Positions 20,192 through 44,490 of a stretch of DNA of 64,000 bases are shown here, one piece after another; position 1 is the first letter of the stretch, and every line of letters starts with the position of its first letter. A program made the translations under genes and the position numbers. Origin of the DNA: Scyliorhinus canicula (taxonomy: Eukaryota). The notes beneath the pieces are model-generated. The model did not search any database. It was given only the letters and a program-made list of their open reading frames with translations, and had not been told where the DNA came from. The DNA lies in contig NC_052161.1 in NCBI RefSeq assembly GCF_902713615.1, positions 124,952,678 through 125,016,677 of the forward strand. The letters are read 5' to 3'.

Positions 20192-21615
20192 GGGCAGCAC
20201 GGTAGCATGGTGGTTAGCATAAATGCTTCACAGCTCCAGGGTCCCAGGTTCGATTCCCGGCTGGATCACTGTCTGTGTGGAGTCTGCACGTCCTCCCCGT
20301 GTGTGTGTGGGTTTCCTCCGGGTGCTCCGGTTTCCTCCCACAGTCCAAAGATGTGCGGGTTAGGTGGATTGGCCATGCTAAATTGCCCGTAGTGTAAGGT
20401 TAATGGGGGGATTGTTGGGTTGCGGGTATGAGGTGGATACGTGGGTTTGAGTAGGGTGATCATTGCACGGCACAACATCGAGGGCCGAAGGGCCTGTTCT
20501 GTGCTGTACTGTTCTATGTTCTATGATTGTAGCACAAGTCTCAAGCTTTAATGTAAAATTATTTTTGATACACAATAAAGTTGGGCAGCATGGTAGCATA
20601 ATGGTTAGCACAATTGCGTCACAGCACCAGGGTCCCAGGTTTGATTCCCGGCTTGGGTCACTGTCTGTGTGGAGTCTGCACACCCTCCCCGTGTGTGCGT
20701 GGGTTTCCTCCAGGTGCTCCGGTTTCCTCCCACAGTCCAAAGATGTGCAGGTTAAGTGGATTTGCCATGCTAAATTGCCCTTAGTGTCTAAAATTGCCCT
20801 TAGCGTTGGGTGGGGTTGCTGGGTTACAGGGATAGGGTGGAGATATGGGTTTGGATGGGGTGCTCTTTCCAAGAGCCGGTGCATACTCCTTCTGCACTGT
20901 AAAGTCTATGAAAGTTTATTTTTGTTAAAAAAATGTAATCTTGTGGCGCACTTATGTCGGTTAATTGCTGGTTGTTTGGATTTCTTCATTAGAATGTTAA
21001 TCCGCCCCAATCAGATGTAGCACCAGTTAAAATGTAGCAGGTGAAAGAAAGTCATCTTAATTGGAGGCAGCACGGTGATATAGTGGTTAGCACTGCTCCC
21101 TCATGGCGCCCAGGTCCCAAGTTCGATCCCGGCTCTGGGTCATTGTCCTTGTGGAGTTTGCACATTCTCTCCGTGTTTGCATGGGTCTCACCCCCACAAC
21201 CCAAAGATGTGCAGGGTAGGTGGATTGGCCACGCTAAATTGCCCCTTAATTGGAAAAAATTAATTGGGTACTCTAAATTTATTTTTCAAAAAGCCCCTTA
21301 ATGAAAAATGGCAGAATCATTTTCATAATGACCCAAGACTAAACTCATGCAATGTGTGATGAAGAACAACCGCAATTAAATCACAAAATGTTACTGGCCA
21401 ATAAGCCATTCAGCCCATCAAACCTGTGCTGCCTTTCCAATACTGGGGCTGTTTAGCACAGGACTAAATTGCTAGCTTTGAAAGCAGGCCAGCAGCACGG
21501 TTCAATTCCCGTACCAGCCTCCCTGAACAGGCGCTGGAATGTGGCGACTAGGGGCTTTTCACAGTAACTTCATTTGGAGGCTACTTGTGACAATAAGCGA
21601 TTTTCATTTCATTTC
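20192..21615 (+). mobile_element. Cluster of four same-orientation SINEs (about 20192-20525, 20583-20910, 21063-21290, 21445-21615)
   Basis: Four tRNA-like heads, each followed by a different 3' module. Confidence 0.88.
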
Positions 21616-22400: not shown

Positions 22401-22502
22401 TTTGTTATTAAGTAGCAAGGGGATGAAGCATGTAACAGGGCAATTCATACCCCCCCCCCCCATTATACCCTCCGCTCCAAGGCTGGAGGTGCTGGCTGGG
22501 AA

Positions 22503-22849
22503 CGGGGGGGGGGGAGGGGGGGGGAAGAAACTAACGGAGGAGGGGGGACAGACAGGAGGAGGGGGGACAGACAGGAGGGGGGAGGACAGACAAGGAGGGG
22601 GGGGGGAGGACAGACAGGAGGGGGTGGACTGACAGGAGTGGGGAGGACAGACAAGGGGGGGGGGGAGGACAGACAGGAGGGGGTGGACTGACAGGAGTGG
22701 GGTGGACTGACAGGAGTGGGGAGGACAGACAAGGAGGGGGGGGGGGAGGACAGACAAGGAGGGGGGGGGGGGAGGACAGACAGGAGGGGGTGGACTGACA
22801 GGAGTGGGGAGGACAGACAGGAGGGGGGGAGGACAGACAGGAGGGGGTG
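22503..22849 (+). repeat. G-rich minisatellite, unit about 17-25 bp GGAC(A/T)GACA(A)GGAG(G)n
   Basis: About 15 visible copies with variable G runs, ending at the N gap. Confidence 0.92.
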
Positions 22850-22949
22850 NNNNNNNNNNNNNNNNNNNNNNNNNNNNNNNNNNNNNNNNNNNNNNNNNNN
22901 NNNNNNNNNNNNNNNNNNNNNNNNNNNNNNNNNNNNNNNNNNNNNNNNN
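22850..22949. other. Assembly gap (100 N, true size unknown)
   Basis: Run of exactly 100 N. Confidence 0.99.
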
Positions 22950-23189: not shown

Positions 23190-23404
23190 TGAATAAATTT
23201 AGAGTACCCAATTATTATTTTTACGCAATTAAGGGCCAATTTAGCATTGTCAATCCACCTAACCTGCACATCTTTGGGTTGTGGGGGTGAAACCCACGCA
23301 GACAGGGGGAGAATGTGCAATCTTCACACGGACAGTGACCCAGATTCGAACTCAGGTCCTCAGCGCTGTAGTCCCAGTGCTAACCACTGCACCACGTGCC
23401 ACCC
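23190..23404 (-). mobile_element. Short V-SINE-type SINE with TSD agaggtgacatctt
   Basis: Direct repeats at about 23172-23185 and 23407-23420 flank the element. Confidence 0.88.
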
Positions 23405-23592: not shown

Positions 23593-23636
<44 letters not shown>

Positions 23637-24413: not shown

Positions 24414-26184
24414 GAGGTGCCTCTACGGGCAAGTTCCAGCCCTCCCAACAGCACAGGCAGCACTGCAGAGAGTGAACCCTGGGATCTCCCGCTCTCTGTC
24501 CCAGACACAAATAAAGGCAGAAAAACTTTCACCGGCTTCAAACGGGCCAAACCGTACTCGTTCCTGAAACATCACAAATCAGGCAGCTTCATGCTGCCCC
24601 CCTTCAACCGCAGGAAGTCTGAGAAAGTGAAAAGGAGGCATGAGGTGAGGGCAAAGGAGGGCAGCCCAAAGATAGAAGAACTCCAGGTTGAGCAGACAGT
24701 CAAGAAGGAGCCATCTAACCCGGCTGCAGAAACTAACCCAGACTCTACTGATCGGGAAGCAGAGGATGCAGCACCATCATCTATTTCACAGCGGCCTCTC
24801 GCCCAGGAGCCTCTCGCCCAGGAGCCTCTCGCCCAGCAGCCTCTCGCCCAGCAGCCTCTCGCCCAGCAGCCCCTCGCCCAGCAGCCCCTCGCCCAGCAGC
24901 CCCTCGCCCAGCAGCCTCTCGCCCAGCAGCCTCTCGCCCAGCAGCCTCTCGCCCAGGAGCCTCTCCCCCAGGAGCCTCTCGCCCAGCAGCCTCTCGCCCA
25001 GGAGCCTCTCGCCCAGGAGCCTCTCGCCCAGCAGCCTCTCGCCCAGCAGCCTCTCGCCCAGCAGCCTCTCGCCCAGCAGCCCCTCGCCCAGCAGCCCCTC
25101 GCCCAGCAGCCTCTCGCCCAGCAGCCTCTCGCCCAGCATCCTCTCGCCCAGCAGCCCCTCGCCCAGCAGCCCCTCGCCCAGGAGCCCCTCGCCCAGCAGC
25201 CCCTCGCCCAGCAGCCTCTCGCCCAGCATCCTCTCGCCCAGCATCCTCTCGCCCAGCATCCTCTCGCCCAGCATCCTCTCGCCCAGCATCCTCTCGCCCA
25301 GCATCCTCGTGCCCAGCATCCTCGTGCCCAGCATCCTCGTGCCCAGCATCCTCGTGCCCAGCATCCTCGTGCCCAGCATCCTCGCGCCCAGCATCCTCGC
25401 GCCCAGCATCCTCGCGCCCAGCATCCTCTCGCCCAGCATCCTCTCGCCCAGCATCCTCTCGCCCAGCATCCTCTCGCCCAGCAACCCCTCGCCCAGGAGA
25501 CTCTCGCCCAGCAGCCTCGCGCCCAGCAGCCTCGCGCCCAGCAGCCTCGCGCCCAGGAGCCCCTGGCCCAGGAGCCCCTGGCCCAGGAGCCTCGCGCCCA
25601 GGAGCCCCTTGCCCAGGAGCCTCTCGCCCAGCAACCCCTCGCCCAGCAATCCTTCGCCCAGGAACCTCTCGCCCAGCAGTCGCTCACCCAGGAGCCCCTT
25701 GCCCAGGAACCTCTCGCCCAGCAGTCGCTCACCCAGGAGCCTCTCGCCCAGAAGCCTCTCGCCCAGAAGCCCCTCGCCCAGGAGCCCCTCGCCCAGGAGC
25801 CTCTCGCCCAGGAGCCTCTCGCCCAGGAGCCTCTCGCCCAGAAGCCTCTCGCCCAGAAGCCTCTCGCCCAGAAGCCTCTCGCCCAGAAGCCTCTCGCCCA
25901 GGAGCCTCTCACCCAGGAACCTCTCACCCAGCCGCCCCTCACTCCAGAGCCCCTCACTCCAGAGCCCCTTGTCCAGCATCCACTCGCCCAGGAGCCCCTC
26001 ACAGACTCTCCAAGCAGCGGTCAGGACAGTCTTTTTCTGCCAACCTCTGTGACAGATGTCATGAATGAGACAATAAAATGTGAGAAAATGGAGCGACAGA
26101 GGACCGTTTTCCGCCAGGGAAAGCAGGTTGTGTTCAGGGACGTGGACACAACCGGGAATGATGAGGACATCATGGTGGATTCTG
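24414..26184 (+). CDS. PHF13: PHD finger protein 13, penultimate coding exon (1771 nt), expanded by a pentapeptide repeat
   Basis: Acceptor ctttttcag|GAG; reads EVPLRASSSPPNSTGSTAESEPWD...KRAKPYSFL...RTVFRQGKQVVFRDVDTTGNDEDIMVDS G|gtaagt, matching recalled human ELPLRSSPSPANSTAGT...RTIVRQGKQVVFRDEDSTGNDEDIMVDS. Frame open throughout. Confidence 0.93.
24795..26003 (+). repeat. Coding minisatellite, 80 x 15 bp (CCTCTCGCCCAG(C/G/A)A(G/T)) encoding PLAQ(Q/E/H/K)
   Basis: First unit starts at 24795 and the 81st, partial unit at 25995, exactly 80 x 15 nt later. Confidence 0.97.
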
Positions 26185-28514
26185 GTAAGTGAACATTTCG
26201 AACACCAAATAATTGCCTGCCACAAACTGTTGTACTTGGATGTGCATCTATAATGCAGACTCAATGTGAGCTCCCTGTGACTCGGTTTAATTCCCTTTCC
26301 AATGAGGCACTGCGTTGTGCGGACAAGAAATTTTCAGGTTTGATCAGTGGTGCATGCAGGGTTAAAACTGTTCACTTGAGCTAACAAAAGGTCTGTCACC
26401 AATGACCCGTAATCATTAATAACTCCATTGCCGTGTTAATGTAAGCCTACTTGTGACACTAATAAAGATTATTATTATTATACTAGTAACAGATTGCAAT
26501 GAGCATGGCAACAAGCTGACTAATGGACACGGTTAGAGACAGCTCCATTCTGGTGGCAATACTGACAGACCTGTAATCATCAAAACTAGCAACCAACCAC
26601 CAGGTAGTACTAGTGTCAGCCTCTAAGCACCAGGTTTCTAACTGCCAGGACTAGTGATGGATGATAATCACTAATACTAGTGACACACGTGTACCCACTA
26701 GGACTAGTGTCAGAGGATAGCATCCAGAACACCGAGGTACTGGTAATCTCCATGACTTGACCCTAGTTTCGTCAATCTACAATCCTATTTCATTGTTCAA
26801 GGAGATATTGTATAGAAATATCACACACCTACAATAAATTGAAATTCTGGGGGCAGTACTCACTATTTATTCCTGATCGGCTCGGGCTCGGTCAATCTCC
26901 CTCGTCGAACACTCTACAATCACATGCACAGAATAAACTGCTGTCTGTAGAACTCCCCACATATTAACCCTGTTTCCCAGTGTACACCTTGCAGTGAATT
27001 AAATAATGACTTTTGTAATATCTAATACACCTTTCTTTTCCAACATTTCCAAGACTATTTCTTCCTCCCATTACTCTTGAAATGCTGAATGATGTTGGGG
27101 TTTGAATCTATTGCTCCCAGATGGCCTTCAATACATCCTGTCCGTTACCATTTCTTCATGTGAGTCTTGATGGTGAGCATCAGAAGGCTAGTGTCCCCAG
27201 GCCATGTGGGGCATCCCATCAAGCTTTAATACAACTGTTAAATTTACACTCACTTTCCAGAAGAGAGCATTCTGCTTGATTTTCCCCTGCCTACTTCAGG
27301 GATTCTGAGGTGAATTGTAGCTGCCCCTAATGCCACACTTGCTGTGGTCATCAAACTCAACAGTAACAAGGGACCCTCATGATTTGTATGTCTCAGTATC
27401 TGCATTTGTAAACTAAGCTATTTCTTCACTGACTAGAAACAGCTACTATGCAGGAGTCCTTTCCAGCTTCCTACTGTTTTAAAAAAAACAAAAAAAACAT
27501 TTCGAGTACCCATTTTTTTTTACAATTAAGGGGCAATTTAGTATGGCCAATCCACCTATCCTGCACATCTTTGGGTTGTGGGGGTGAGACCCACGCAGAC
27601 ACGGGGAGAATGTGCAAACTCCACACGGACGGTGATCTGGGGCTGGGATCGAACCTGGGACGTCAGCGCCATGTTGAAGGGATTATAGTTGCATTGCAGA
27701 TTTGAGAAAGCCAAACTGTTTTATGGACTTGTATTCCCTTCAGTTTCAAAGATTAGATCTGATAGTTTCTCATTATCTACCCTGAACTATTTCCTCAGAT
27801 GGAGGAGTCCAGAATAAAGGCTTAATCTAAAAATTGGAAAAAGGTAAATCGGGGTCAGGATATCAGGAAACACGTTGTCGCTCGAGGGTAGTCCAAATCT
27901 GAGTACTGCCCCCAGAATTTCAATTTATTGTAGGTGAAAAGCTGATGAGGCTGGGGTCAACTGAAAATTTCCAACCTGACATCAAGCGGTTTTTGTTGGG
28001 CAAGACTATTACGTATAATAAAGATCTAATTAAATGGCAGAACATATTCGAGGGGCTAAATTATGTCTCACTGTCTTCTATCCATCTGTATCTATCTCCA
28101 TCTCTATCTGCATCTATCTCCATCTATCAATCATACAACCTGAGTCATGCTCGGTCCCGTTCCAAAACAGCAGAACGCCATAGACGTTAAGTGCCACTCG
28201 TACTGAGGTAAATAGCAGATTGCTGAATGATCAAACAAGGGGTGCTTTTTTGACCAAGGGACTGAGAAACGCCGATGTCTTTGGTCATGAGTTACAATGA
28301 AGTTTGGGGCCACTGTTGACACTGAAGAGGGGCGCCAAGCTTTGCCTTGTTCACATGTTCTTGGCTGTCTGTTATTTAGTTGTAAGCATTTCTTGTACGT
28401 CTCAAACCACCAGCTTCCTTCTAAAACTCGGAATTTCCTGACATCCACTTGGTACAAGTTCTGCCCACCTTGCACTACCTCATCCAAATGGTCATTCATC
28501 ATATGTGCTTACAG

Positions 28515-28915: not shown

Positions 28916-28985
28916 TGAAAAGTGCAAATGCAAATTATTGTTGATCTGATTTGTGATTGACCATTCAATCTTCTTCTTGGAACAG

Positions 28986-29212
28986 ATGATGATTCCTGGG
29001 ACCTGGTGACGTGTTACTGCATGAAGCCCTTTGCTGGCCGGCCAATGATTGAATGCAACGAGTGCGGTACCTGGATCCATCTGTCCTGTGCCAAGATCCG
29101 CAAGTCCAATGTCCCAGAGGTGTATGTCTGTCAAAGGTGTCGAGATTCCAAATACGACATTCGGCGATCGAACCGATCCCGAACCGGCTGCAGAAAGCAC
29201 TTCCTTGACTGA
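28986..29212 (+). CDS. PHF13: PHF13 last coding exon, PHD finger (C4HC3)
   Basis: aacag|AT completes the phase-1 codon; [75 protein letters not shown], near-identical to the recalled human C-terminus. Confidence 0.97.
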
Positions 29213-35025: not shown

Positions 35026-35099
35026 ATGCCTAAGTCGTGTGCTGCCTATAACTGTACCAACAGGTACAGCAGCAAAAACAAGGAGCTCACCTTCCACAG
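35026..35099 (+). CDS. THAP3: THAP domain protein 3, coding exon 1
   Basis: MPKSCAAYNCTNRYSSKNKELTFHR, donor AG|gtaaat; recalled human MPKSCAARQCCNRYSSRRKQLTFHR. Confidence 0.93.
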
Positions 35100-36616
35100 G
35101 TAAATCAGCCAGGTGCCTCACCATGTCAACATATGCTGGGATTGAACAGTCATGGTACAAAATAGTAAGACCTTTTCACATCAATCAATATCAATAATTG
35201 ATGTACACCAGTACTGTTTATCACCATCATCCCATCTGGGGCAAGTAACTCTCACCTGTCTCCCAGGTAAATCTGACAGGGAGCCCGAACAGAGAATGCA
35301 GGGGAAAATACGGTGGGCCTGGCAGCATCTGTGGAGAGAGAGAGAGACAAGAGTTAATGTTTCGAGTCCAATGCCACTCTTCTTCCAACAGTCCCATTGG
35401 CCAAAAACTTTAACCCTGTTTCTCTCCCTCCACAGATGCGGCCAGAACTGCTTGAGTTTTTCCAGCACTTTGGTTTTTTTTCCAAACTCCAGCATCTGCA
35501 CTATTTTACTGTTATATATGTACTGAGAGTGAAAGGTTATTTCATATCCATAACTAATCAGTGTGTATCGATAAATATCATAACTGCCAACAGCATATTG
35601 GGGACTGGTAACTCACCTGTCAACAGGTAACTCAGACAGGGACCCAGAAAATCAAAGTATATGCTGAATAGTCATTTTTTGAAAGACAAAATATGATAAT
35701 TTTATATAAATAATTCGTCAACTAATGTGTTAAAGCAATGGTATAACTTCTCAATAGCACAAGTAGCTCATGTCACTGATAAATAAGCCAGTGGTCCTGA
35801 ATATTACTAATCAAAAGTTGCATATATTGAGAATTAGGTCGTTTCATATAATTATTTTATGCAGTATTATGATCTGGCCTGCACGCCCTGAAAAGGGGTT
35901 GGAAGCAGACTAAATCGTAAATTTCAAAATAATTTTTTAAATATATACTCAATGAGGGCAAATCTGTAGTGTAATGGGAAAGATTGGGGGAGTGGAACTA
36001 ATTGGATAACTTTTTCAAAGTGCAGGCGCAGCCAGGATGGGAAAAATGGCCTCTTTTTTGGCTTGTATGATTCAATGAATTAATGAGTAAAAATACAATA
36101 TAGCTACTAACAGTGTGAGTGGCTTTGAAACTGAGAAGGAGCAGCCTTTTATGTAAATACATAATTAATCAATTAATTATTTAACAATAATTTATAACAC
36201 TTCTGAGACAAAGAGCCTACCTTCCACAGGTCAGTCAGCCTGGATTGTCGAAGATTAATAATGTATGTACTGAGGGTGAGCAGCCACTGATGTAATTAAT
36301 TAATTTGTAAACTATCAACATCAGGAAGTGGGGAGTTAAACTTCCATAGGTCACTCAGCCAGGAGCCCAGAATCATGATTACCGTAGATCCTGAGAGTTG
36401 GTAGCGAGTTACATAATTAATATGAGAGACTCCCTTGGAAATGAGACAAATAATATGGGGTGGCTATAACATGCTGTGAGGGGGATAACTTGGTACAGAA
36501 GTTGGGAGGGAGAAGGAGCTAACCCGGTCTCCGATACGTGGCAGGAGGAGACTGCAGACTTGCTGTTTAACATTGGGCTTTGTTTCTTTCCTTGATGTTC
36601 TTTCACTGTTACTCAG

Positions 36617-36809
36617 GTTTCCCTTCAGTAAGCCGGACTTATTAAAACAGTGGATGAACAATGTTGGAAGAGCAGAGTTCAAACCCAACCAACACACAGT
36701 CATTTGCTCGGAGCATTTCAAACCAGAGTGTTTCAACACTTGGGGCAACCGAAAAAATCTGAAGCATAATGCTGTACCCACGGTTTTCCGCTACTCAGAG
36801 ATTGTGAAG
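36617..36809 (+). CDS. THAP3: THAP3 coding exon 2 (rest of C2CH THAP zinc finger, AVPTVF box)
   Basis: ctcag|G TTT...; FPFSKPDLLKQWMNNVGRAEFKPNQHTVICSEHFKPECFNTWGNRKNLKHNAVPTVFRYSEIVK|gtacag; phases fit (74+193=267 nt). Confidence 0.96.
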
Positions 36810-43939: not shown

Positions 43940-44490
43940 ATATACCCAGTGTACCAGGAGCTGTACTCTGTATATACCCAGTGGACCAGGAGCTGTACTC
44001 TGTATATACCCAGTGTACCAGGAGCTGTACTCTGTATATACCCAGTGTACCAGGAGCTGTACTCTGTATATACCCAGTGTACTAGGAGCTGTACTCTGTA
44101 TATACCCAGTGTACCAGGAGCTGTACTCTGTATATACCCAGTGTACCAGGAGCTGTACTCTGTATATACCCAGTGTACCAGGAGCTGTACTCTGTATATA
44201 CCCAGTGTACCAGGAGCTGTACTCTGTATATACCCAGTGCACCGGGAGCTGTACACTGCATATACCCAGTGCACCGGGAGCTGTACACTGCATATACCCA
44301 GTGCACCGGGAGCTGTACACTGCATATACCCAGTGTACCAGGAGCTGTACTCTGTATATACCCAGTGTACCGGGAGCTGTACACTGCATATACCCAGTGC
44401 ACTGGTAGCTGTACTCTGAATAAACCCAGTGCACTGGTAGCTGTACTCTGTATAAACCCAGTGCACTGGGAGCTTTACTCTGTATTTAAC
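43940..44490. repeat. 32-bp minisatellite (TATATACCCAGTGTACCAGGAGCTGTACTCTG), about 17 copies
   Basis: Directly visible; explains the 32-aa-period ORFs on both strands. Confidence 0.95.

What the first reader, a model, noticed from the sequence alone, without database searches (positions are those of the whole stretch)
24795..26003. PHF13 carries a 400-aa in-frame pentapeptide repeat (80 x PLAQ[Q/E/H/K])
Seen: 80 tandem 15-bp units with no net indel or in-frame stop, inside an exon whose two ends match PHF13 and have canonical splice sites; the exon is 1771 nt. Known: mammalian PHF13 is about 300 aa, an H3K4me2/3-reading PHD protein with a disordered PEST-containing middle and no such repeat. 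Inference: this PHF13 is roughly 700 aa, with a Pro/Gln-rich spacer between the N-terminal/NLS region and the PHD finger that could alter reach, turnover or condensate behaviour. CAG, GAG and AAG codons are each one substitution from TAG, yet no stop occurs in about 150 such codons despite many other substitutions, hinting at translation under constraint. Likely a coding VNTR.
Basis: partly seen in the sequence, partly recalled or inferred. Interest (0 to 1): 0.85.

Follow-up and report, generated by a model that had tools for sequence, protein, structure and literature searches.

The report
Giant coding repeat in catshark PHF13
A catshark's copy of the chromatin-reader gene PHF13 carries 80 in-frame copies of a 15-base unit that more than double the protein's length. 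The same five-residue motif sits at that spot in all sampled sharks and rays at 2 to 51 copies, so this is the extreme case of a lineage-wide unstable coding repeat, not a one-off.

Summary
Tandem Repeats Finder reports 80.8 copies of a 15-bp unit at 24789-26000, with 91% matches and no indels. The array lies in frame inside a 1771-nt exon (24414-26184) with AG/GT boundaries.

The gene is PHF13. The next coding exon (28986-29212) is a PHD finger that matches solved human PHF13 at E 7e-29. Both exon flanks are 92-94% identical to a Scyliorhinus torazame protein that carries the same array at 51 units.

The array is not a private novelty. Every shark and ray PHF13 retrieved has PLxx[E/Q] units at this position. 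With one exception, a LOW QUALITY model with a frame error, their linker lengths differ by exact multiples of five residues (2 to 81 units). A chimaera model, a frog, bony fishes and mammals lack the motif.

The array sits between the polybasic NLS and the conserved RTVFRQGKQVVF-PHD module. In human PHF13 that interval is the disordered PEST2/IDR3 region. AlphaFold2 gives no structure for it.

Five of six frames are stop-free, and the chance expectation of no stop is P = 0.30.

Best reading: an ancestral elasmobranch coding minisatellite, hugely expanded in catsharks and translated as a disordered spacer. Transcript evidence, copy-number accuracy and the missing 5' exons remain untested.

The parts
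24414..26184 (+). Large internal coding exon of PHF13 (1771 nt). It enters in phase 0 and leaves after the first base of a codon.
   Evidence: AG at 24412-13 and GT at 26185-86. There are 590 open codons. The first residues, EVPLRASSSPPNSTG, align with PHF13 orthologs from the exon boundary on.
24414..24794 (+). N-terminal flank (127 aa): conserved SSSPPNSTGS motif, KPYSFLKHHK, and the polybasic patch RRKSEKVKRRHEVRAKE (24609-24659), which corresponds to the NLS/DNA-binding IDR2 of human PHF13.
   Evidence: 120/127 residues identical to S. torazame and 59-87% identical to other elasmobranch PHF13. Alignment A1. IDR2 definition from PMC12214034.
24795..25994 (+). 80 tandem 15-bp units with consensus CCTCTCGCCCAGCAG (PLAQQ). 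72% G+C, 51% C, one CpG per unit. Variant types are blocked: a Q/E block, then an H block, then a PRAQH block, then an E/K block.
   Evidence: AlphaFold2 single-sequence model: pLDDT below 50 and no secondary structure across the array.
25995..26009 (+). Terminal, non-expanded unit PLTDS. It is shared with other sharks (rays read PLTDF or PLMDI) and marks the 3' edge of the repeat.
26010..26184 (+). C-terminal flank of the exon: PSSGQDS...NETIKCEKMERQRTVFRQGKQVVFRDVDTTGNDEDIMVDS. This block is conserved across vertebrates (IDR4 region of human PHF13).
   Evidence: 58/63 residues identical to S. torazame. 98 PHF13 proteins were retrieved with this block. Invariant columns in A1.
28986..29212 (+). 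Last coding exon: completes the Asp codon (G|AT), then DDSWDLV, the PHD finger, the basic tail and a TGA stop.
   Evidence: AG at 28984-85. PDB 3o70 PHF13 E 6.7e-29, against PHF23 at 2e-24. Pfam PHD, PHD_5 and PHD_2 all above cutoff.

Best explanation
This is the PHF13 ortholog of a catshark very close to Scyliorhinus torazame.

Its large exon contains a 15-bp coding minisatellite of 80 units plus the ancestral terminal unit. The array is translated in frame as about 400 residues rich in Pro, Gln, Ala and Leu, and this stretch is intrinsically disordered. It lies in the variable linker between the polybasic NLS/DNA-binding patch and the conserved RTVFRQGKQVVF-PHD module. By position, that linker is the PEST2/IDR3 region of human PHF13.

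Origin (inferred): the unit descends from a short PLxx[E/Q] motif of at least two copies that was already present in the common ancestor of sharks and rays. It has since grown and shrunk by whole units, through replication slippage or unequal exchange, independently in several lineages. Catsharks are the extreme case.

Why the frame holds: the unit is exactly five codons. In addition, any frameshift or stop would delete the strongly conserved PHD finger downstream.

Constraint and effect (inferred): copy number and most residue identities appear only weakly constrained. The likely effect is a longer, more Q/P-rich IDR3. In human PHF13 this segment promotes liquid-like self-association and weakens chromatin binding.
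For: Array and frame.

PHF13 identity:
- PHD exon matches 3o70 and Pfam PHD.
- Flanks are 94% and 92% identical to S. torazame XP_072334181.1.
- A THAP-domain gene lies downstream on the same strand. From memory, this matches the human PHF13-THAP3 order.

Ancestral, unit-wise dynamics:
- In 12 elasmobranch sequences the distance from KPYSF to RTVFRQGKQ is 121 + 5n residues, with n = 0, 0, 3, 3, 5, 7, 11, 13, 15, 26, 49 and 79.
- The only exception is a LOW QUALITY model with a frame error.
- The chimaera model (120) and a frog (115) lack the motif.

Rapid turnover: the window has 81 units and S. torazame 51. The edge units are shared, but 35 window units and 14 torazame units are of private types.

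Treated as coding elsewhere: both S. torazame RefSeq isoforms keep the whole array.

Disorder: mean pLDDT 39.7 with no secondary structure in the array. There is no Pfam pentapeptide hit.

Position relative to human domains: alignment A1, plus IDR2 at aa 105-135 and IDR4 at aa 190-230, with PEST2 = IDR3 between them (PMC12214034).

The linker is expansion-prone in general: salamander and Rana PHF13 carry unrelated repeats at the same place.
Against: - No transcript or protein evidence is available for this species.
- The two 5' coding exons (MWENLL...[21 protein letters not shown] in S. torazame) are not in the readable window. An assembly gap lies 1.5 kb upstream of the exon at 22850-22949, so an intact full-length gene is not shown here.
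- No protein from this genome's own annotation appeared in the searches.
- The exon holds a good in-frame donor-like site at 24645 and 57 in-frame acceptor-like sites within the array. Partial removal by splicing therefore cannot be excluded.
- Copy number rests on a single assembly.
- The AlphaFold2 run used no alignment, so its low confidence is weak evidence for disorder.
Confidence: 0.8

Rival explanations
1. The array is a selected functional module. Each PLxQ[E/Q] unit acts as a short linear motif, and copy number tunes multivalent binding or the condensate behaviour of PHF13. On this reading the catshark expansion is adaptive rather than tolerated.
For: - Pro-Leu at positions 1-2 and Glu/Gln at position 5 are kept from rays (PLAPE) to sharks (PLAQE, PLTPE).
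- Synonymous variant states are over-represented within the array: 8 of 11 possible against 12 of 34 non-synonymous, Fisher p = 0.04.
- The array lies in the region that in human PHF13 is the strongest driver of liquid-liquid phase separation (PMC12214034).
- The same linker expanded independently in salamanders and a frog.
Against: - Copy number ranges from 2 to 81 among species with an otherwise near-identical protein.
- Congeners differ by 30 units, and many units are of private types.
- Position 5 freely takes Q, E, H or K, and position 2 takes R in 12 units.
- The synonymous excess is marginal and is confounded by copying of variants and by mutation bias.
- Common descent with concerted evolution explains the shared motif without invoking selection.
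Confidence: 0.12
2. Most or all of the array is removed from the mature mRNA, either as an in-frame internal intron (exitron) or by use of an alternative acceptor. The main protein would then be close to the usual 330 aa.
For: - GAG|GTGAGG at 24645 is a near-consensus donor in phase 0.
- 57 units present YYYYYYGYYYAG followed by a phase-0 codon, so any such splice would keep the frame.
Against: - Both RefSeq isoforms of S. torazame retain the whole array and differ only in the first exon.
- The units lack a T-rich tract and an obvious branch-point motif (read directly).
- The donor-like hexamer simply encodes the conserved residues E-V-R of the NLS region found in all sharks.
Confidence: 0.08
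3. The copy number, or the intact frame, is an assembly artefact. The real array would be much shorter, longer or frame-broken.
For: - An assembly gap and G-rich and C-rich low-complexity tracts lie 1-2 kb upstream.
- The Chiloscyllium plagiosum model of the same gene is flagged LOW QUALITY and reads part of its array out of frame. This shows that such arrays do get mis-assembled.
Against: - The array is only 1.2 kb and has a rich internal variant structure: 25 distinct units in ordered blocks and no indel. That pattern is not what collapse or artificial expansion usually produces.
- An independent assembly of a congener has 51 units at the same site.
Confidence: 0.06

Closest known systems
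Human/mammalian PHF13 (SPOC1), an H3K4me2/3 reader of 300 aa
   Same: - Same PHD finger: 3o70 at E 6.7e-29, near-identical over 49 residues.
- Same RTVFRQGKQVVFRD..GNDEDIMVDSDDDSW block, SSSPPNSTG motif and polybasic NLS.
- Same order of ordered and disordered segments as described in PMC12214034 and PMC4915813.
   Different: Mammals have a fixed 142-residue span from the NST motif to the RTIVRQ block and no repeat. The catshark has about 400 extra residues in the PEST2/IDR3 interval. The N-terminal dimerisation domain could not be seen in the window.
Scyliorhinus torazame XP_072334181.1 / XP_072334179.1, annotated 'uncharacterized protein' (581 / 619 aa)
   Same: Orthologous gene with the same 15-bp-derived PLAQ[E/Q] array at the same site, the same first and last units, and the SFAQE landmark unit. 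Flanks are 92-94% identical.
   Different: It has 51 units rather than 81. It has no PLAQH, PRAQH or PLAQK blocks, but has private PSLQQ and PLARE units.
Other elasmobranch PHF13 (Mustelus, Carcharodon, Heterodontus, Stegostoma, Chiloscyllium, Pristiophorus, Heptranchias, Mobula, Narcine, Amblyraja, Rhinoraja)
   Same: PLxx[E/Q]-type pentapeptides at the homologous position. Linker lengths differ by multiples of five residues.
   Different: These species carry 2-28 units, or about 57 in Chiloscyllium if its flawed model is trusted. Their units are more degenerate. Secondary expansions use other variants: PLAPE in skates and 10-aa PLTVEARVQQ in Chiloscyllium.
Salamander and Rana temporaria PHF13 (Pleurodeles 612 aa, Lissotriton 641 aa, Ambystoma 542 aa; Rana HLKMSPP x ~8)
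   Same: Independent large insertions or repeats in the same NLS-to-RTVxRQ linker.
   Different: Their sequences are unrelated. The salamander insertions are degenerate Ser/Thr/Leu/Glu-rich repeats of about 13-15 aa, and the Rana repeat is a heptapeptide. None is a near-perfect array.
Pentapeptide repeat proteins (Pfam PF00805, right-handed quadrilateral beta-helix)
   Same: Only the five-residue period.
   Different: The consensus A(D/N)LXX is not matched. There is no Pfam hit. Every unit contains a proline. The model shows no strands.
Coding minisatellites in disordered protein regions in general (for example MUC1 VNTR or DRD4 exon 3 VNTR; from general knowledge)
   Same: The unit length is a multiple of three. 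Gain and loss occur by whole units. Variant units cluster in blocks. Copy number differs greatly between close relatives.
   Different: Here the host is a chromatin reader whose affected segment has an assayed role in phase behaviour. Polymorphism within the species has not been examined.

Membership tests
PHF13 (SPOC1) orthologs | C-terminal PHD finger closer to PHF13 than to its paralog PHF23 | tested here: met
   3o70/3o7a PHF13 at E 6.7e-29 and 1.3e-28, against 6wxk PHF23 at 2e-24. Pfam PHD families score above cutoff.
PHF13 (SPOC1) orthologs | Conserved RT[VI][FI]RQGKQVVFRD..GNDEDIMVDSDDDSW block immediately before the PHD finger, split by a phase-1 intron | tested here: met
   Present at 26100-26184 and continued at 28986. 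The columns are invariant in A1. 98 proteins were retrieved with this block; most are named PHF13 by their sources and the rest are unnamed or generically named.
PHF13 (SPOC1) orthologs | Polybasic NLS/DNA-binding stretch (IDR2) and SSSPPNSTG motif in the large exon | tested here: met
   RRKSEKVKRRHEVRAKE at 24609-24659 and SSSPPNSTGS near the exon start, both aligned in A1.
PHF13 (SPOC1) orthologs | N-terminal domain with the dimerisation helix ([10 protein letters not shown][AV]YAGYIP) | tested here: inconclusive
   tblastn of the S. torazame and Carcharodon N-termini finds nothing in the window at E < 10. An N gap lies at 22850-22949 and the window starts 24 kb upstream.
PHF13 (SPOC1) orthologs | Conserved gene neighbourhood (a THAP-domain gene downstream on the same strand) | tested here: met
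   THAP domain at E 2.8e-14 in an exon around 36609-36800, with MPKSCAAYNCTNRY at about 35026. That the human neighbour is THAP3 comes from memory.
Coding minisatellite / VNTR | Head-to-tail units, length a multiple of three, in frame within a coding exon | tested here: met
Coding minisatellite / VNTR | Copy number varies between individuals of the species | not testable with these tools
   Only between-species variation is shown: 81 against 51 units in congeners and 2-28 elsewhere.
Pentapeptide repeat family (PF00805) | Match to the A(D/N)LXX profile | tested here: not met
   The Pfam scan at E <= 1 returns only two low-complexity hits: Extensin_1 (92.9 bits, below its cutoff of 105) and HC2.
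Pentapeptide repeat family (PF00805) | Beta-helical fold | tested here: not met
   The AlphaFold2 model has no strands or helices in residues 128-530 and pLDDT of about 35-45. This was a single-sequence run, so it is weak evidence.
PEST2/IDR3 segment of PHF13 | Lies between IDR2 (NLS, human aa 105-135) and IDR4 (aa 190-230) | tested here: met
   In A1 the elasmobranch units fall in the gap-rich columns between the polybasic block and the RTVFRQ block. Domain limits come from PMC12214034.
PEST2/IDR3 segment of PHF13 | Controls half-life and promotes liquid-like self-association | not testable with these tools
   Shown for human PHF13 only (PMC12214034). Nothing is known for the shark protein.

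The most novel reading that the evidence does not exclude
The length of the PHF13 IDR3 linker is a selected tuning knob for chromatin compaction and phase behaviour. It has been lengthened repeatedly and independently in catsharks, bamboo sharks, sawsharks, skates, salamanders and a frog. The 400-residue catshark array would then shift PHF13 from chromatin-bound, polymer-bridging behaviour toward liquid-like condensates, or extend its reach between the DNA-binding patch and the H3K4me3-reading PHD finger.
Probability: 0.1. Interest if true: 0.7.

Novelty: new variant of a known kind. Interest (0 to 1): 0.45.

Why it matters
- Natural length series: PHF13 is a compact, highly conserved H3K4me3 reader. 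Recent work assigns opposing roles to its ordered and disordered parts: chromatin bridging against liquid-like condensation. Elasmobranchs offer 2 to 81 units in exactly the disordered segment (PEST2/IDR3) reported to be the strongest driver of condensation, with the rest of the protein almost unchanged. That makes the effect of IDR length on reader behaviour directly testable.
- Annotation: the S. torazame ortholog is labelled "uncharacterized protein" and the Chiloscyllium one "MDC1-like". Both are PHF13.
- Method: absence of stops in a GC-rich, recently expanded array is not evidence of coding constraint.

Tried and rejected
- Stop-codon constraint: rejected.
- Pentapeptide-repeat (beta-helix) family: rejected.
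- Upstream exons: regex and tblastn found nothing in the window. The N gap was not filled.
- Ortholog DNA for a unit-by-unit nucleotide comparison: S. torazame and Rhinoraja proteins are not on record, and the Mustelus file is too large. Common descent of the units therefore rests on protein sequence and register only.
- This genome's own annotated protein: none appeared in three word-indexed searches covering lengths of 132-1032 aa.
- Exhaustive representative search with Heptranchias PHF13: it returned the PHF13/PHF23 family but collapses the elasmobranchs into one cluster, so it added little.
- Earlier scan notes: none for this place.
- Literature: no paper on shark PHF13 or on a PHF13 coding repeat.
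- Other long ORFs upstream: Pfam scans found no domain, so no upstream neighbour was identified.

Full report
**1. The observation**

- Tandem Repeats Finder reports one array at 24789-26000: period 15, 80.8 copies, 91% matches, no indels, score 1578.
- A two-unit probe allowing three mismatches hits 60 times, all inside this array, against zero in 100 shuffles.
Its 590 codons contain no stop.
- Cutting from 24795 gives 80 repeat units plus the terminal PLTDS unit. There are 25 distinct DNA units and 16 peptide types: PLAQQ 25, PLAQE 17, PLAQH 10, PRAQH 8, PLAQK 6, and rarer ones.
- The title formula PLAQ[Q/E/H/K] fits 58 of the 80 units. Twelve units carry Arg instead of Leu. The last dozen or so units are the most degenerate (PLTQE, PLTPE, PLVQH and others).
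- Variants are blocked along the array. Units 1-28 are mostly Q/E. Units 29-45 are all His-ended, with PRAQH at units 35-42. Further Arg-containing units follow at 49-54. The last twenty units mix E and K. This is the signature of local duplication.

**2. Gene identity**

- The next coding exon begins after AG at 28984-28985. It completes the split codon (G|AT = Asp) and reads [55 protein letters not shown]... to a TGA at 29210-29212.
- It matches the solved PHD finger of human PHF13 (3o70, E 6.7e-29) better than that of PHF23 (2e-24). It passes the Pfam PHD models.
- The 127-residue N-flank of the big exon retrieves shark and ray proteins named PHD finger protein 13. The best hit is a 581-aa Scyliorhinus torazame protein at 94% identity. 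Flank identities are 120/127 and 58/63.
- A THAP-domain gene follows on the same strand. From memory, this matches the human PHF13-THAP3 order.
- The window is therefore the PHF13 locus of a catshark close to S. torazame.
- The two short 5' coding exons seen in S. torazame are not in the readable window. A 100-N gap sits at 22850-22949 beside a G-rich 19-bp array. I did not try to fill it.
- Exons 3 and 4 encode 665 aa. With about 66 N-terminal residues, as in S. torazame, the protein would be about 730 aa.

**3. The repeat is not private to this genome**

- Every elasmobranch PHF13 retrieved carries PLxx[E/Q]-type pentapeptides at the same position.
- The distance from the conserved KPYSF to RTVFRQGKQ is listed below.

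| Species | KPYSF-to-RTVFRQGKQ distance (residues) |
|---|---|
| Heptranchias | 121 |
| Mobula | 121 |
| Amblyraja | 136 |
| Heterodontus | 136 |
| Carcharodon | 146 |
| Mustelus | 156 |
| Stegostoma | 176 |
| Rhinoraja | 186 |
| Unnamed EukProt shark | 196 |
| Pristiophorus | 251 |
| S. torazame | 366 |
| This window | 516 |

- Every value is 121 + 5n. The single exception is Chiloscyllium plagiosum (395). Its model is flagged LOW QUALITY and visibly reads part of its array in another frame.
- All length change in this linker has therefore occurred in whole pentapeptide steps.
- The Callorhinchus model (120) and a frog (115) have no such motif. The linker sequences printed for a primate, a mole-rat, a gar, Polypterus and a sardine show none either, and mammals hold a constant linker length.
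- The simplest reading is a motif of at least two units in the shark-ray ancestor, followed by independent expansions. These occurred in catsharks (Mustelus, of the same order, has about 9 units), in Chiloscyllium, in Pristiophorus and in Rhinoraja. The ordinal placements come from general knowledge.

**4. Turnover is fast**

- The window has 81 units and S. torazame has 51.
- The two arrays share the first unit, the SFAQE landmark and the ending PLVQH-PLAQE-PLTDS.
- However, 35 window units (PLAQH, PRAQH, PLAQK and others) and 14 torazame units (PSLQQ, PLARE and others) are of types absent from the other species.
- Both RefSeq isoforms of S. torazame differ only in the first exon and keep the whole array as coding. 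They are named "uncharacterized protein".

**5.

- The array is stop-free in five of six frames.
- The coding frame has 140 one-step stop opportunities among 3627 possible changes. One antisense frame has 281 of 3618 and is also stop-free.
- Variants spread by copying, so I counted distinct variant states rather than cells. Twenty of the 45 possible single-step states from the consensus are seen, and neither of the two stop states is among them. The chance of that is 0.30. Absence of stops says nothing here.
- A weak sign of protein-level constraint does exist. Eight of 11 possible synonymous states are present, against 12 of 34 non-synonymous ones (Fisher p = 0.04). Mutation bias and non-independence make this tentative.
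- The stronger argument for an open frame is indirect. The PHD finger and the block before it are encoded downstream and are nearly invariant across vertebrates. Any stop or frameshift in the array would remove them.

**6. What the peptide is**

- Composition is Q 27%, P 20%, A 18%, L 17%, E 6.5%, H 5%, R 3%, K 1.5%.
- A proline at every fifth residue is incompatible with regular helices or sheets.
- Pfam gives only low-complexity hits and no pentapeptide-repeat match.
- A single-sequence AlphaFold2 model has mean pLDDT 39.7 and no secondary structure across the array.
- In alignment A1 the elasmobranch units fall in the gap-rich interval between the polybasic NLS and the RTVFRQ block.
- In human PHF13 the NLS/DNA-binding IDR2 is aa 105-135 and IDR4 is aa 190-230. 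The segment between them is PEST2 = IDR3. It regulates half-life, is predicted to be the strongest driver of liquid-liquid phase separation, and its deletion increases chromatin affinity (PMC12214034).
- The catshark array therefore enlarges that segment roughly eight-fold. What this does to the protein is inference only.

**7. The linker is expansion-prone more widely**

- Searching with the conserved C-flank for long PHF13 proteins found salamander proteins of 542-641 aa. They carry about 300 extra residues of degenerate repeats in the same interval.
- Rana temporaria has about eight HLKMSPP heptads there.
- The mammalian interval is fixed at 138-143 residues, and at 142 in most species sampled.
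- The catshark array is the longest and most regular case found, but the phenomenon is recurrent.

**8. Rivals**

- Splicing. The exon contains a near-consensus donor-like site, GAG|GTGAGG, at 24645 in phase 0. It also has 57 acceptor-like YYYYYYGYYYAG sites within the array, all in phase 0. An in-frame internal intron is therefore conceivable. Against it, the S. torazame models retain the array and the units lack T-rich tracts.
- Assembly error. This cannot be excluded without reads. However, the array is short, richly structured and indel-free, and a congener's independent assembly shows a large array too.
- Adaptive function of the units. This is possible but not required by the data.

**9. 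Known or new**

- I found no paper on shark PHF13 or on a PHF13 coding repeat, and no earlier scan note for this place.
- The orthologous sequences are public but mis-named.
- I rate this a new variant of a known kind: a bona fide PHF13 carrying an extreme, lineage-specific expansion of an ancestral coding minisatellite in a functionally studied disordered segment.
- Interest is moderate. The array itself is ordinary repeat biology. It does, however, provide a natural length series for testing how IDR length affects a chromatin reader.

Noticed in passing
window 24645 and 24795-25994: Near-consensus donor-like site GAG|GTGAGG at 24645 (phase 0), plus 57 acceptor-like YYYYYYGYYYAG sites inside the array, all in phase 0. 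Any such splice would stay in frame, so a possible exitron.
   Followed up: partly
window 24795-26003: The array is a CpG-dense body-of-gene feature: 78 CpG, observed/expected 0.61, against 0.37 in the next 3 kb. CpG is lost mainly in the 3' degenerate units, where GCC (Ala) has become ACC (Thr), consistent with those units being the oldest.
   Followed up: partly
window 22496-22949 and 23596-23636: A G-rich 19-bp tandem array (about 15 copies) runs straight into the 100-N gap, and a run of 41 C lies 650 bp further on. The PHF13 5' exons are missing from the readable sequence, so the promoter region may be what failed to assemble.
   Followed up: no
window 20192-20262, 20583-20653, 21065-21135, 21102-21264, 23214-23344 (-), 27515-27673: Several copies, in both orientations, of an interspersed element whose head looks tRNA-derived (GGGCAGCACGGTAGC...GGTTCGATTCCCGGCT). 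Probably a SINE family.
   Followed up: no
window 43940-44485: A 32-bp tandem array, 17 copies at 95% identity, open in several frames. It gives spurious weak Pfam hits.
   Followed up: no
window ~35026-35100 and 36609-36800 (+): THAP-domain gene downstream of PHF13: MPKSCAAYNCTNRY..., then FPFSKPDLLKQW...CSEHF, with Pfam THAP at E 2.8e-14. Probably THAP3 by position.
   Followed up: partly
P0099, P0100, P0101, P0097, P0073 (not in the window): Salamander PHF13 proteins (542-641 aa) and Rana temporaria PHF13 carry unrelated repeat expansions in the same NLS-to-RTVxRQ linker, while the mammalian linker length is essentially fixed (138-143 residues, mostly 142).
   Followed up: partly
P0001/P0243 and P0006 (not in the window): Public annotation errors. 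S. torazame PHF13 is named 'uncharacterized protein'. Chiloscyllium plagiosum PHF13 is named 'mediator of DNA damage checkpoint protein 1-like', and part of its repeat is read out of frame.
   Followed up: yes
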